Of a DNA stretch of 15,961 nt, positions 3,116-8,196 are shown one piece after another (position 1 is the first letter of the stretch; every line of letters begins with the position of its first letter). The stretch lies in NCBI RefSeq assembly GCF_006345805.1, contig NW_021825282.1, positions 1 to 15,961 of the forward strand, given 5' to 3'. The notes under the pieces are model-generated. The model was given only the letters and a program-made list of their open reading frames with translations. It did no database searches and was not told where the DNA came from. The position numbers and the translations under genes were made by a program. This stretch comes from Octopus sinensis. Lineage: Eukaryota.

Positions 3116-3530
3116 GGCGCAGGAGTGACTGTGTGGTAAGTAGCTTGCTTACGAACCACATGGTTCCGGGTTCAGTCCCACTCCGTGGCACCTTAGGCAA
3201 GTGTCTTCTATTATATCCTCGGGCCGACCAAAGCCTTGTGAGTGGATTTGGTAGGCGGAAACTGAAAGAAACCTGTCGTATATATGCATATATATATATA
3301 TGTGTGTGTGTGTGTATGTTTGTGTGTGTCTGTGTTTGTCCCCCTAGCATTGCTTGACAACCGATGCGGGTGTGTTTATGTCCTCGTCACTTATCGGTTA
3401 GAGACCGATAGAATAAGTACCAGGTTTACAAAGAATAAGGCCTGGGGCCGATTTGCTCGACTAAAGGCGGTGCTCCAGCATAGCCGCATTCAAATGACTG
3501 AAACAAGTAAAAAAAAAGAGAAAGAGAAAA
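3116..3530 (+). mobile_element. tRNA-derived SINE family B with internal (TA)/(TG) microsatellite, copy 1
   Basis: A-box-like TGACTGTGTGG (3126-3136), B box GGTTCAGTCC (3169-3178), CORE-like CCTTAGGCAAGT, internal microsatellite and A-rich tail. Homologous copies lie at 4372-4693 and 8664-9065. Confidence 0.88.
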
Positions 3531-4371: not shown

Positions 4372-4693
4372 TATTTCTTTTATTCTTTTATTTGTTTTAA
4401 TCACTAGACTGCGGCCACGCCGGAGCACCGCCTTTAGTCGAATAAATCGATGCCAGGACTTTTTCGTTGTAAGCCTAGCACTAATTCTAGCGGATCTCTT
4501 TTGCCGAGCCACTAAGTTACGGGGACATAAACACACCAGCATCGGTTGCCAAGCGGTGGTGGGGGACAAACATAGACCTATATACATATATATATATATA
4601 TGACAGGCTTCTTTCAGTTTCCGTCTACCAAATCCACTCACAAGGCTTTGGTCACCCCGAGGCTATAGTAGATGACACTTGCCCAAGGTGCCA
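4372..4693 (-). mobile_element. SINE family B, copy 2, missing its tRNA head
   Basis: The reverse complement aligns with copy 1 from TGGCACCTTGGGCAAG to the A-rich tail; homology stops at 4693. Confidence 0.88.
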
Positions 4694-6383: not shown

Positions 6384-6525
6384 TTATCTATCTATCTTCT
6401 GCTAAACATATACCTATACATGCATGCATATATATATATATATATTATACGAACGTCTATGTATGCATATATCTATATATAATATTATATATATATATAT
6501 ATATATATAGATATATATATATATA
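6265..6525. repeat. (ATCT)n followed by interrupted (TA)n microsatellite
   Basis: Direct reading. Confidence 0.93.
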
Positions 6526-6672
6526 AATAAATGAAAGAATGGAGTCGAACGAAGATGTTAACAAAATTCCTTTACTCTCGACACATGTTTCGAAGACAGC
6601 ATGTTTTCATTCCAAAGGAATAAAGGGTGCATTATGCAATCTTCCCATCAGGAAAGAAAGGGAGCCTCTCTC
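6526..6672 (-). repeat. Left arm of 147-bp inverted repeat (3' pLTR relative to the endonuclease ORF)
   Basis: Reverse complement of 7857-8003 with 4 mismatches in 147 bp by manual alignment. Confidence 0.95.
6569..6661 (-). ncRNA. Type I hammerhead ribozyme, A9G core variant
   Basis: Minus strand: CCUUU-CUUUC, CUGAUGG, stem II GAAGAU...GUCUUC, GAA, ACAUGUGU, C (GUC cleavage triplet), GAGAG-U-AAAGG. Stem I is 10 bp with a bulged U. The core has G in place of A9 (C at 6645 on +). Confidence 0.7.
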
Positions 6673-7126
6673 GACAACAAGACAAACAAAAATTTCGATG
6701 ATTGCCTACATGGTAATCAAAGCGATAACGAGTGTTTTTTTTAAAAAATCCGTTAGAAGAATTGACTTCAAAAATAGATAGTAGGAAGAGAAGGGATAAA
6801 GTAATAATAGGCAGGGAACAGTATGTTTGCTGTATGTATGGAAATGTGTGAGTGTGTGCTTGTGTTAATGAGTGCGTGTATTTGTGTGTGTGTATGTGTG
6901 TGTGTATAACTGCATTTGTGTCTGTGTATGTGATTGTGTGTGTGAGAGAGACAGATGTCAAAGATAGATAGTAGGAAGAGAAGATATAAAGGAATAATAG
7001 GTAGGGAACAAGTGGAGAGGGAAGGGTACGTTGATTGAAAGAATGTTTGAAGGCTTAGGAAAGAATTTCTCTATAGCAGTTGGGTGGACGTGAAGCTAAT
7101 TGTTCAAACCACAGTGACTATCGTTA

Positions 7127-7928
7127 TCATTTATATGAGTAGAAAGTGTGTTTCTGCCAGTGTTTACATTTGTACGATTTTTCTGTATGTTTACTAGGGG
7201 AACCTTAGTGAAAAGAATATGGAAGAGTTCAGAGTTACAAATGTTACAAAATCTCCAGCCCTTATCAAAAGGAAAGGATACAGACAATATGAACCAATCT
7301 AACTTGAAAATTATATTGTTGTCTTTAAGACGCCTAACTAATTTACTAAGCCCTGTACTATATCGTTTTTTCCTATCTCTAAATGTTGAATAGTGGTTTA
7401 AATTCTCTTGGATAACTGGGAAGTGGACGCTCCTATATAGAAGAAGACATCGGTACCGGAAGAAATTCTACACTGGTAAATAGAATTCTTAATCTTAGAA
7501 TTACTAGACAAAAATTTAATTCTGTTGGGGTTGTCCTCCGAGATCGAGACGAAGTTTTTATTGTTATGACTGTTGTTACTATTATTATTAGCGCTAACAA
7601 CTACACTATTTCTATTATTATTAGTATTATTAATGGTATTACAACCAGCAATACCCCCGACAATAATACCGTTATTGTTGTTACCATCAACACTACCATT
7701 GTTATTAACACGACTAATACTATTATTAATATTATCATTGTTAACACTTTCGCTGCTACTAATGCTGCTACTATTAATACTATTCCTATTATTATGATTG
7801 TATGATGGGTTGGAATTAGCAAGATTAGTGTTGGAACTCCCGGGTGAAGAATCTTTGAGAGAGGCTCCCTTTCTTTCCTGATGAGAAGATTGCATAATGC
7901 ACCCTTTATTCCTTTGAAATGAAAACAT
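7127..7928 (-). pseudogene. GIY-YIG endonuclease of a Penelope-like element with Asn-rich N-terminal linker, two 1-nt frameshifts
   Basis: NSIYQCRISSGTDVFFYIGASTSQLSKRI (YIG at 7431-7439); after a shift at ~7400, NHYSTFRDRKKRYSTGLSKLVRRLKDNNIIFKLDWFILS...CNICNSE (7228-7248)...LVN; after a shift at ~7180, KSYKCKHWQKHTFYSYK-stop (TGA 7127-7129). The catalytic-type Y, R, E, N residues and the H, CxxC, H ligands are all present. Confidence 0.85.
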
Positions 7929-8003
7929 GCTGTCTTCGAAACATGGGTCGAGAGTAAAAGAATTTTGTTAACATCTTCGTTCGACTCCATTCTTTCATTT
8001 ATT
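7857..8003 (+). repeat. Right arm of 147-bp inverted repeat (inverted 5' pLTR)
   Basis: Reverse complement of 6526-6672. Confidence 0.95.
7870..7958 (+). ncRNA. Type I hammerhead ribozyme with canonical core
   Basis: Stem I CUUUC (7873-7877)/GAGAG (7950-7954); CUGAUGA (7878-7884); stem II GAAGAU (7885-7890)/GUCUUC (7932-7937); GAAA (7938-7941); short stem III AC/GU; GUC triplet with predicted cleavage after C7949. Confidence 0.8.
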
Positions 8004-8164
8004 CATATACAACACACAAATTTCTACACATGAACCCGGAGTTTCTACCCTTGACAGGTGGCTTCAACCGTGTTTTCTGACGTGAATTTGCAACCCAGGT
8101 TTCGGTTAAACGAATTTTCCATGCTGTCGATAAACATAGGATAATTCATTCACCTACTTAAATA

Positions 8165-8196
<32 letters not shown>

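What the first reader, a model, noticed from the sequence alone, without database searches (positions are those of the whole stretch)
6526..8003. RT-less Penelope-like cassette: GIY-YIG nuclease between two inward-facing hammerhead ribozyme repeats
Seen directly: 147-bp inverted repeats (143/147 identical), a hammerhead fold in each arm, and an endonuclease ORF with no RT. Established: PLEs carry GIY-YIG nucleases, pLTRs in direct or inverted orientation, and type I hammerheads. Inference: transcription from either direction meets a ribozyme near its 3' end, so the unit could release defined RNAs. It is either a one-off 5'-truncated insertion with an inverted pLTR or an amplified non-autonomous endonuclease-only family. 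The latter would be a distinct system.
Basis: partly seen in the sequence, partly recalled or inferred. Interest (0 to 1): 0.85.

Follow-up and report, generated by a model that had tools for sequence, protein, structure and literature searches.

The report
Dead, truncated octopus Penelope-like retroelement copy
This is the decayed 3' part of a Penelope-like retrotransposon of the "Hydra" clade, in an octopus-like genome, joined head-to-head to a short inverted partner copy; this layout is already well described for such elements, so the finding is ordinary.

Summary
The sequence features are real. Arms 6520-6672 and 7857-8009 form a 153-nt inverted repeat (148/153 identical). Each arm carries a type I hammerhead-like motif. 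Between them lies a GIY-YIG-type reading frame, and the window holds no reverse transcriptase.

Three details differ from the finding.
- The nuclease frame is a pseudogene with two frameshifts. Its 176-aa ORF starts at a chance ATG inside the arm.
- The left hammerhead has a core mutation (CUGAUGG). Rfam reports no hammerhead match in either arm.
- The ribozyme strands point outward, not inward.

Relatives in Octopus sinensis identify the parent as a Hydra-clade Penelope-like element. [quoted passage not shown]

The only other copy of the same subfamily I could reach (L001) has one arm and extends further upstream, so the 7856/7857 junction is not shared.

The unit really spans 6520-8162, between TA-rich repeats. 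It is best read as two 5'-truncated cDNA copies joined head-to-head, one of them with the optional 3' "tail". This architecture is published for these elements.

I found no evidence for an amplified endonuclease-only family, but no octopus genome could be searched. Interest is low.

The parts
6428..6519 (.). TA-rich microsatellite flank on the left: the presumed (TA)n target
   Evidence: TRF reports a period-2 AT array at 6428-6529. The arm ends directly against it.
6520..6672 (-). 3'-terminal arm (pLTR segment) of copy A, without a tail
   Evidence: Inverted repeat I1. It is collinear with the single 3' arm of L001 at 11412-11674.
6575..6656 (-). Hammerhead-like motif of the left arm, with a mutated core (CUGAUGG at 6651-6645). 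The nominal cut lies between 6580 and 6579.
   Evidence: Alignments A1 and A7. My core pattern and my descriptor both miss it.
6673..7126 (-). 3' UTR of copy A, with a (TG)n-like tract flanked by a 53-nt direct duplication (6768-6820 / 6958-7010)
   Evidence: Its ends align to the L001 3' UTR.
7127..7532 (-). GIY-YIG endonuclease domain remnant in three frames: 7532-7401 (-3), 7398-7189 (-2) and 7183-7130 (-1). Stop codons at 7129-7127.
   Evidence: tblastn with the L001 and L003 nuclease sequences. Alignment A5 shows that Y, YxG, R, H, E and N are all retained. Distant family proteins hit 7180-7410.
7533..7856 (-). Asn-rich low-complexity linker of the PLE ORF. The 5' truncation point of copy A is at 7856.
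   Evidence: 58% identity to P0001 across this region. In L001 the frame continues upstream into the WF.IPF linker domain.
7857..8009 (+). Copy B: an inverted, heavily 5'-truncated copy consisting of the 3'-terminal arm
   Evidence: Inverted repeat I1. It is 85% identical to the L001 arm in + orientation.
7873..7954 (+). Hammerhead-like motif of the right arm, with an intact core. Helix I is 7873-7877 with 7950-7954. Helix II is 7885-7895 with 7927-7937. The cut follows C7949.
   Evidence: Pair counts on A7: 92% of cells paired against 38-49% with the partners slid, and 3 compensatory pairs.
8010..8162 (+). 3' 'tail' extension of copy B, present on this side only
   Evidence: Collinear with the segment after the arm in L003 (12311-12445): a 25/29 match, z about 9. 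The last 24 nt are an exact reverse complement of L003 12471-12494, the other half of a palindrome around (TA)n.
8163..8196 (.). TA/TATG microsatellite flank on the right
   Evidence: TRF reports a period-4 TATG array at 8163-8196.
7398..7928 (-). Chance 176-aa ORF that starts at an ATG inside the arm and reads into the linker and the first half of the nuclease
   Evidence: The same arm-encoded peptide opens a 47-aa ORF from the left arm (6601-6744, +). No gene with this product is on record.

Best explanation
The region 6520-8162 is one old, inactive insertion of a Hydra-clade Penelope-like retrotransposon (PLE) into a TA-rich microsatellite of an octopus-like genome. It consists of two 5'-truncated copies of the same element joined head-to-head at 7856/7857.

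- Copy A lies on the minus strand (7856 to 6520). It keeps the last part of the single PLE ORF (the Asn-rich linker and the C-terminal GIY-YIG nuclease, now with two frameshifts), the 3' UTR and the terminal pLTR segment with the hammerhead motif.
- Copy B lies on the plus strand (7857 to 8162). It keeps only that terminal segment plus a 3' 'tail'.

The 153-nt inverted repeat is simply the stretch the two copies share. Its length is set by where copy B was truncated and by where reverse transcription of copy A began.

Inferred mechanism: the element's nuclease cut both strands of the (TA)n target. Both 3' ends primed reverse transcription of element RNA from one of two alternative internal start sites, which gives ends with and without the tail. 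The two incomplete cDNAs were then joined.

The hammerhead is a normal part of the element's pLTR. It has no special role in this arrangement. One copy is mutated in the core, and the two lie on opposite strands, so they cannot pair as the dimer that such minimal hammerheads are thought to need.

Shown: the anatomy, the homology and the decay. Inferred: the two-strand priming origin.
For: FAMILY
- The only close protein relatives are two Octopus sinensis predictions.
- L003 carries a 667-aa ORF plus a 161-aa nuclease ORF, followed by a second partial-tandem copy.
- 2082 library representatives match the thumb and linker region of P0002.
- Their alignment shows RW, DKT, KDHK, FYPSI, YRDDGL, WFNPPFS, CxCx5C, GIY..YxG..R..H..E..N, CxxC and CxH. 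These are the signatures published for the Hydra clade, along with (TA)n insertion (PMC8557442).
- The AF2 model of member P0034 (pLDDT 87) matches TERT best, at E=1.7e-9, followed by other RTs.
- The nuclease profile's two best PDB hits are I-TevI and T4 endonuclease II.

ONE-OFF TRUNCATION
- L001 is about 80% identical in the ORF and 79-85% in the arm. It has one arm, no inverted repeat, and an ORF that runs about 370 bp further upstream.
- The L003 copy 1 has its own 42-nt inverted 3'-terminus at its 5' side. The layout therefore recurs with different junctions.

ENDS
- The left arm and the L001 arm stop at (TA)n. The right arm and the L003 arm continue through a conserved tail to (TA)n.

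LITERATURE
- An inverted 5'-truncated copy next to the 5' end, and a tail on one side only, are described as typical.
- A purified PLE protein cleaves and extends both strands and starts reverse transcription at two internal sites that define the tail (PMC11167929).
- Paired hammerheads on opposite strands 100-700 bp apart have been seen before (PMC4209133).

DECAY
- Two frameshifts, about 3% divergence between the arms and an A9G change in the left core.
Against: - No octopus genome could be searched. Copy number and junction uniqueness rest on one comparable copy (L001), which is itself only about 80% identical.
- The tail here is about 150 nt long, against the 30-40 nt described for other PLE clades.
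- Its end is related to the 5' leader of the L003 copy 2 in reverse orientation. A more complex history is therefore possible, such as rearrangement of a longer copy.
- I cannot distinguish formation at insertion from later deletion or inversion.
- The hammerhead assignment rests on a hand-written descriptor and four sequences, two of them nearly identical. Rfam and folding energies give no support.
- Inverted repeats of this kind can also be assembly artefacts.
Confidence: 0.78

Rival explanations
1. The cassette (arm - linker/nuclease - 3' UTR - arm) is a member of an amplified non-autonomous family. It is mobilised in trans by RT-bearing Hydra-clade elements, and the ribozymes define the ends of its RNA.
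For: Non-autonomous PLE derivatives that share 3' ends with autonomous families do exist: Chlamys MRC1 and animal retrozymes. The cassette keeps a complete 3' end, and the arms are 97% identical.
Against: The one other same-subfamily copy lacks the junction and the second arm. The nuclease frame has two frameshifts. A search with junction and arm peptides found nothing. In the PLE tested in vitro, insertion did not need ribozyme cleavage. The inverted layout is already explained by ordinary PLE insertion.
Confidence: 0.05
2. A longer or full-length copy with an inverted upstream partner was inserted first. The RT part was lost later by internal deletion or rearrangement. The junction at 7856/7857 would then be post-insertional.
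For: The end of the tail (8137-8160) is an exact reverse complement of the 5' leader of the L003 copy 2. On the minus strand the unit therefore begins with leader-like sequence. The arms differ by only 5 of 153 positions.
Against: The same arm-then-tail order occurs in L003 in the sense orientation. The tail is therefore most simply part of the 3' end. 5' truncation at insertion is the common state for PLEs. No remnant of RT or N-terminal sequence is present in the window.
Confidence: 0.12
3. It is a cut-and-paste DNA transposon or MITE-like element, with 153-nt terminal inverted repeats and a TA target duplication, that happens to carry a nuclease gene.
For: Long terminal inverted repeats, with TA-rich sequence on both sides.
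Against: In L001 and L003 the arm is the single 3' end of a retroelement. The interior is the truncated C-terminus of an RT-nuclease polyprotein. The right end carries an extra 150-nt tail that the left end lacks. No transposase is present.
Confidence: 0.03
4. The 'hammerhead' is not a working ribozyme in this family. It is only a conserved pLTR sequence that happens to contain CUGAUGA and GAAA 53 nt apart.
For: Rfam reports no hammerhead match even at E<=10. Folding is not better than shuffles. Helix II carries a 33-nt insert and an internal mismatch. Two of the four copies have core or G10.1-C11.1 defects. PLE hammerheads cleave poorly in vitro.
Against: Core, cleavage triplet and all three helices are kept between subfamilies that are only about 73% identical. 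92% of cells are paired, against 38-49% in slid controls, and there are 3 compensatory pairs. The helix III region is palindromic (ACAUGUGU, ACAUAUGU), as in published PLE hammerheads. A compact hammerhead flanks another Hydra-clade ORF and is also missed by Rfam.
Confidence: 0.2

Closest known systems
Hydra clade of C-terminal EN+ Penelope-like elements (Craig, Yushenova, Rodriguez, Arkhipova 2021, PMC8557442)
   Same: RW and DKT motifs and a divergent RT in the parent (L003). C-terminal GIY-YIG without the CCHH motif. [quoted passage not shown] Ends at (TA)n. A hammerhead in the pLTR. Aquatic invertebrate host; Mollusca are listed among the hosts.
   Different: The octopus copies have lost every Cys of the CxCx5C linker motif and instead carry an Asn-rich low-complexity insert. 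The L003 unit is about 3.65 kb rather than under 3 kb. The hammerhead has a long helix II insert rather than the canonical form.
Standard PLE insertion architecture: 5'-truncated copy, adjacent inverted 5'-truncated copy, one-sided 'tail' (PMC8557442 Fig. 2; Frangieh et al. 2024, PMC11167929)
   Same: Head-to-head truncated copies that form flanking inverted repeats. A tail on one side only. An AT-rich target. Two alternative 3' ends.
   Different: The tail is about 150 nt rather than 30-40 nt. The mechanism has been shown in vitro for a Poseidon element of Anolis, not for this clade.
PLE minimal type I hammerheads (Cervera and de la Pena 2014, PMC4209133)
   Same: Open helix I of 5 bp. Long helix II closed by G10.1-C11.1. 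A 2-bp helix III with a palindromic loop region. Location in the pLTR. Pairs on opposite strands a few hundred bp apart have been reported.
   Different: Helix II has 11 positions, with one mismatch and a 33-nt distal insert. There is no unpaired base between A9 and G10.1. The two motifs are 1.2 kb apart.
Animal non-LTR retrozymes (non-autonomous PLE derivatives; bioRxiv 10.64898/2026.07.22.740005)
   Same: An RT-less sequence derived from PLE pLTRs and carrying hammerheads.
   Different: Retrozymes are tandem direct repeats with hammerheads on one strand, which allows a unit-length RNA to be cut out. Here the motifs are inverted and enclose a broken coding fragment.

Membership tests
Penelope-like element, Hydra clade | RT of the PLE/TERT type, with DKT in place of DKG and an RW(K) motif | tested here: met
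   Met for the parent family only. L003 has ...SDKTRN... and ...RIRW.... DK is invariant and T is the consensus residue after it (two of 17 rows have N) in the 17-protein alignment. The AF2 model's best PDB match is TERT, E=1.7e-9. Pfam RVT_1 is below threshold. The window itself has no RT.
Penelope-like element, Hydra clade | C-terminal GIY-YIG nuclease lacking CCHH, with CxxC and CxH around the conserved E and N | tested here: met
   Alignment A5: invariant Y, Y-G, R, H, C..C, E, N and C.H, all present in the frame-corrected window sequence. There is no CCHH.
Penelope-like element, Hydra clade | Linker with a CxCx5C motif upstream of the GIY motif | tested here: not met
   The window, L001 and L003 all read NPNR[IL][KR]FLSSNSKI[KR]N where the other members have CNCx5CPLxGxC. 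This is a subfamily-specific loss. The upstream WF.IPF...SHNNKLL linker domain is present in L001 and L003.
Penelope-like element, Hydra clade | Insertion into (TA)n | tested here: met
   TA-rich arrays abut both ends of the window unit, the L001 3' end and the L003 ends. An empty site was not available.
Penelope-like element (general) | 5' truncation, pLTR and inverted partial copies, optional tail | tested here: met
   compared with the published description.
GIY-YIG nuclease superfamily (Pfam PF01541) | Profile match at the curated threshold | tested here: inconclusive
   The window scores 15.7-16.1 bits against a cut-off of 22.6. 4 of 16 family members match, with a best E of 7.4e-5. The top two PDB profile hits are I-TevI (E=0.046) and T4 EndoII (E=0.054). 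All catalytic residues are conserved.
Hammerhead ribozyme, type I | Core CUGANGA ... GAAA ... UH with G10.1-C11.1 | tested here: met
   Met in the right arm and in L001. Not met in the left arm (A9G) or in L003 (G.G at 10.1-11.1).
Hammerhead ribozyme, type I | Three helices supported by covariation | tested here: met
   19 pairs, 92% of cells paired against 38-49% with partners slid, and 3 pairs with changes on both sides. There are only 4 sequences, so support is modest.
Hammerhead ribozyme, type I | Match to the Rfam covariance models | tested here: not met
   No hammerhead family is listed at gathering score or at E<=10. L001 and L003 were scanned whole at gathering score only; part of L003 that includes its arm was also scanned at E<=5. 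Neither gave a hammerhead hit.
Hammerhead ribozyme, type I | Self-cleavage | not testable with these tools
   Needs in vitro transcription or mapping of RNA ends.
Non-LTR retrozyme | Tandem direct repeats with hammerheads on the same strand | tested here: not met
   The two motifs are on opposite strands. There is no direct repeat of the arm in the window.
TIR DNA transposon / MITE | Both termini inverted in all copies, target duplication, transposase or a transposase-bearing parent | tested here: not met
   L001 has a single arm. The parent is an RT-nuclease retroelement. A target duplication cannot be scored in TA repeats.

The most novel reading that the evidence does not exclude
The arm-nuclease-arm cassette could be a unit that has amplified in octopus genomes as an RT-less PLE derivative. 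Alternatively, its read-through transcripts could matter to the host, for example as a 153-bp hairpin RNA or as ribozyme-trimmed RNAs made from either strand. My evidence argues against both readings but does not exclude them, because no octopus genome or transcriptome could be searched.
Probability: 0.05. Interest if true: 0.5.

Novelty: new member of a known kind. Interest (0 to 1): 0.15.

Why it matters
The result matters mainly for annotation. It shows that an eye-catching 'nuclease between two ribozymes' is the ordinary scar of Penelope-like retrotransposition, and it places an octopus family in the recently defined Hydra clade.

Two small points may interest specialists.
- These octopus copies still sit at (TA)n even though they have lost the CxCx5C zinc-finger-like linker, which has been proposed to be linked to that targeting.
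- Their hammerhead has an unusually long helix II, which standard Rfam models miss.

Tried and rejected
- Rfam scans of the window, of the region at E<=10, and of all related loci gave no hammerhead. They returned only low-complexity microRNA-like noise in the TA/TG repeats.
- Single-sequence folding of the arms gave no thermodynamic signal.
- Pfam on the raw ORF and on a first, wrongly joined frame found nothing. The correct frame join came from the O. sinensis relative.
- An exact look-up of the 176-aa ORF found no record.
- A word-index search with junction-spanning and arm-encoded peptides found nothing. This is uninformative, because octopus repeats are rarely gene-called.
- Pfam on ten full-length family proteins gave only sub-threshold RVT_1 and GIY-YIG hits. 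RT identity was therefore established by structure instead.
- I considered a Naiad-type (N-terminal nuclease) origin, because the nuclease follows directly after the arm. I rejected it because L001 and L003 show the RT thumb and linker upstream of the nuclease.
- I considered that the tail is an inverted 5' leader marking a full-length 5' end. The collinear arm-tail order in L003 makes a 3' extension the simpler reading.
Full report
OBSERVATION

The inverted repeat is real. Arms 6520-6672 and 7857-8009 are 153 nt long, 97% complementary and 1184 nt apart.

The right arm carries a complete type I hammerhead core on the + strand:
- helix I, 7873-7877 with 7950-7954;
- CUGAUGA at 7878-7884;
- G10.1-C11.1 closing an 11-position helix II, 7885-7895 with 7927-7937;
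- GAAA at 7938-7941;
- a 2-bp helix III;
- GUC ending at 7949.

A core pattern matches once in the window, against 0.04 expected from shuffles. I wrote the pattern after seeing the motif, so that comparison is post hoc.

The left arm is the mirror image on the minus strand but reads CUGAUGG. This is a change at invariant position A9.

Rfam reports no hammerhead match at gathering score or at E<=10. Folding energies are indistinguishable from shuffles.

Each ribozyme strand runs toward the outside of the unit, so 'inward-facing' is not accurate.

THE READING FRAME

ORF 7398-7928(-), 176 aa, begins at an ATG inside the arm. It then crosses an Asn-rich stretch and ends just after SIYQCRISSGTDVFFYIGASTSQLSKRI.

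Pfam saw nothing in it. The only close database relatives are two Octopus sinensis predictions, P0001 and P0002. The genomic locus of P0001 (L001) shows how the frame should continue...RISNHYSTFRD...TGLSKLVWRLK...WSIL...CGICNSELF..PLVN...CKHW.

In the window this continuation lies in two other frames. tblastn gives 7925-7401 (-3), 7398-7189 (-2) and 7183-7130 (-1), which means two frameshifts. The nuclease gene is therefore a pseudogene, and the arm-encoded N-terminus is a chance extension.

WHAT FAMILY IT BELONGS TO

L003, the locus of P0002, has three relevant features:
- a 667-aa ORF;
- a 161-aa nuclease ORF directly after it, with a frameshift in between;
- a second copy starting about 3.65 kb downstream, which is a partial tandem.

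A full HMMER scan with P0002 found 2082 library representatives (E<=1e-3), many of them 700-800 aa long. Their alignment shows, in order:
- RxRW, ADKT and TLKDHK..CRLINP;
- FDI..FYPSI, FDVTMGS, GLYRDDGL and FLDVTLDL;
- PY.KPN, SNHPP and WFNPPFS..V.TNIGK.FL;
- CNCx5CPL.G.C and VVY.A.V...Y.G.T..FK.R...H;
- T.LS.Y.W.LK, W.SI, C.LC..EK..I, LN.R.E and C.H.

These are the features Craig et al. list for their Hydra clade of C-terminal EN+ PLEs:
- DKT instead of DKG, and an RWK motif;
- no CCHH motif;
- a CxCx5C linker, with CxxC and CxH around the conserved E and N;
- hammerheads in the element;
- insertion into (TA)n.

Pfam barely recognises the family, so I predicted the structure of one member. 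P0034 gave pLDDT 87 and pTM 0.84. Its best PDB match is the telomerase catalytic subunit (3du5, E=1.7e-9), followed by other reverse transcriptases.

A profile of 16 nuclease domains has I-TevI and T4 endonuclease II as its two best PDB hits, at weak E-values of 0.046 and 0.054. The frame-corrected window sequence keeps every invariant catalytic position. Distant full-length members hit window 7180-7410 directly, with their residues of about 615-700.

The parent is therefore an RT plus C-terminal GIY-YIG element. The window holds only the C-terminal part of it.

IS THE CASSETTE A FAMILY OR A ONE-OFF?

L001 is the only other copy of the same subfamily I could reach. It is about 80% identical in the ORF and 79-85% in the arm. 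It has a single arm downstream of the ORF and no inverted repeat. Its frame continues about 370 bp further upstream, through KNYIWFVIPFGK...IASHNNKLLNKDSSPGS, before meeting a LINE-like fragment.

The window's junction falls exactly at ...L|KDSSPGS (7856/7857). It is therefore a truncation point that L001 does not share.

The L003 copy 1 has its own inverted fragment at its 5' side, a 42-nt exact reverse complement of its 3' terminus. The layout thus recurs, but with a different junction each time.

A search with junction-spanning and arm-encoded peptides found nothing. A genome-wide DNA count was not possible with the collections available.

TRUE LIMITS AND THE TAIL

The left arm and the L001 arm end at ...TTCATTTAT followed directly by (TA)n. 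The right arm continues for about 150 nt to a TA/TATG array at 8163-8196.

That extension is collinear with the segment after the arm in L003 (a 25/29 block, z about 9). It ends in a 24-nt exact match to one half of a palindrome that brackets (TA)n in L003.

The unit therefore spans 6520-8162 and lies between TA-rich repeats. It has two kinds of 3' end, with and without the tail.

MECHANISM

Published work describes exactly this pattern:
- high 5' truncation;
- an inverted 5'-truncated copy adjacent to the 5' end, forming flanking inverted repeats;
- a tail that is often present on one side only.

A purified PLE protein cleaves and extends both DNA strands. It starts reverse transcription at two internal RNA sites, and the interval between them is the tail. 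It does not need hammerhead cleavage for insertion in vitro. Opposite-strand hammerhead pairs 100-700 bp apart were already noted in PLE-rich genomes.

The simplest account is that two cDNAs were primed from the two strands of a cut (TA)n site, both were incomplete, and they were joined head-to-head. This is an inference. Later deletion from a longer copy cannot be excluded.

THE HAMMERHEAD

The four available copies are the right arm, the left arm, L001 and L003. On their alignment, the hand-drawn structure is paired in 92% of cells. With the partners slid, the figure is 38-49%. There are three compensatory pairs, one in helix I and two in helix II.

The helix III region is palindromic (ACAUGUGU, or ACAUAUGU in L003), as in published PLE hammerheads that are thought to act as dimers.

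A compact hammerhead lies 95 nt downstream and about 150 nt upstream of the ORF of another Hydra-clade element in marine metagenome contigs. Rfam misses that one as well.

I therefore accept the motif as the family's pLTR hammerhead. It has an unusually long helix II, with a 33-nt distal insert.

In this locus it is unlikely to do anything. One copy is mutated and the two are on opposite strands. In a read-through transcript the arms would pair with each other over 153 bp rather than fold as ribozymes.

COMPARISON AND VERDICT

It works like, and is, a remnant of a Hydra-clade PLE. One clade feature is not met: the CxCx5C linker has been replaced in all three octopus copies by non-Cys residues, after an Asn-rich insert.

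It is not a retrozyme, because there are no same-strand tandem repeats. It is not a TIR transposon, because other copies have a single arm and the parent is an RT-nuclease retroelement.

The locus is a new member of a known kind, and interest is low.

Noticed in passing
window 7533-7856 (-); L001 10225-10560; L003 10750-11200: All three octopus copies lack every cysteine of the Hydra-clade CxCx5C linker. They carry an Asn-rich low-complexity insert instead, yet their ends still lie at (TA)n. This sits awkwardly with the proposed link between that linker and (TA)n targeting.
   Followed up: partly
window 8010-8162; L003 12311-12494: The 3' tail is about 150 nt, much longer than the 30-40 nt described for PLEs. 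In L003 its end forms a 72-nt palindrome around an internal or target (TA)n (12420-12491). The window's last 24 nt match the far half of that palindrome exactly, in reverse complement.
   Followed up: partly
window 7966-7989 (antisense) vs L003 12517-12539: The outer end of the arm, read antisense (ATGGAGTCGAACGAAGATGTTAAC), resembles the start of the element's ORF in L003 (ATGGAGTTGTTCGAGATTAAC). It could be a short terminal inverted repeat or chance. Unexplained.
   Followed up: no
window 6768-6820 and 6958-7010: A 53-nt direct duplication (91% identical) brackets a (TG)n-like tract inside the 3' UTR of the element.
   Followed up: no
window 3186-3523, 4374-4693 (inverted), 8716-9069: Three copies (77-81% identical) of a SINE-like repeat of about 340 bp. 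It also occurs several times in the O. sinensis loci L001 and L003.
   Followed up: no
window 10002-10315 / 11931-12264 and 10752-10862 / 13080-13210: Two further inverted pairs (82% and 93% identical) lie in an A-B-A'-B' order within very TA-rich sequence. This is another repeat structure of unknown kind.
   Followed up: no
window 13731-13888 (also 9326-9426): A dispersed repeat that is 93% identical to L003 338-495. This was the closest DNA match between the window and O. sinensis outside the element.
   Followed up: no
L001 7556-7984 (-) and 9076-9848 (+): A second, different Hydra-type linker remnant (VLWFNSIFGSHVSTKIAGKLL...FNRLTVKVSYAN), and a LINE-like ORF fragment that abuts the 5' end of the L001 PLE copy.
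   Followed up: no
L007 2448-2485 (+); L008 113-150 (+): A compact hammerhead (attgc CUGAUGA gagag...ctttc GAAA ...UA gcaat) flanks a 727-aa Hydra-clade ORF in marine metagenome contigs. My descriptor finds it, but Rfam does not, even at E<=5.
   Followed up: partly
window 6404-6513: Weak Rfam matches to mir-297, mir-466, mir-3149 and similar families fall entirely in TA/TG microsatellite sequence and are low-complexity artefacts.
   Followed up: yes
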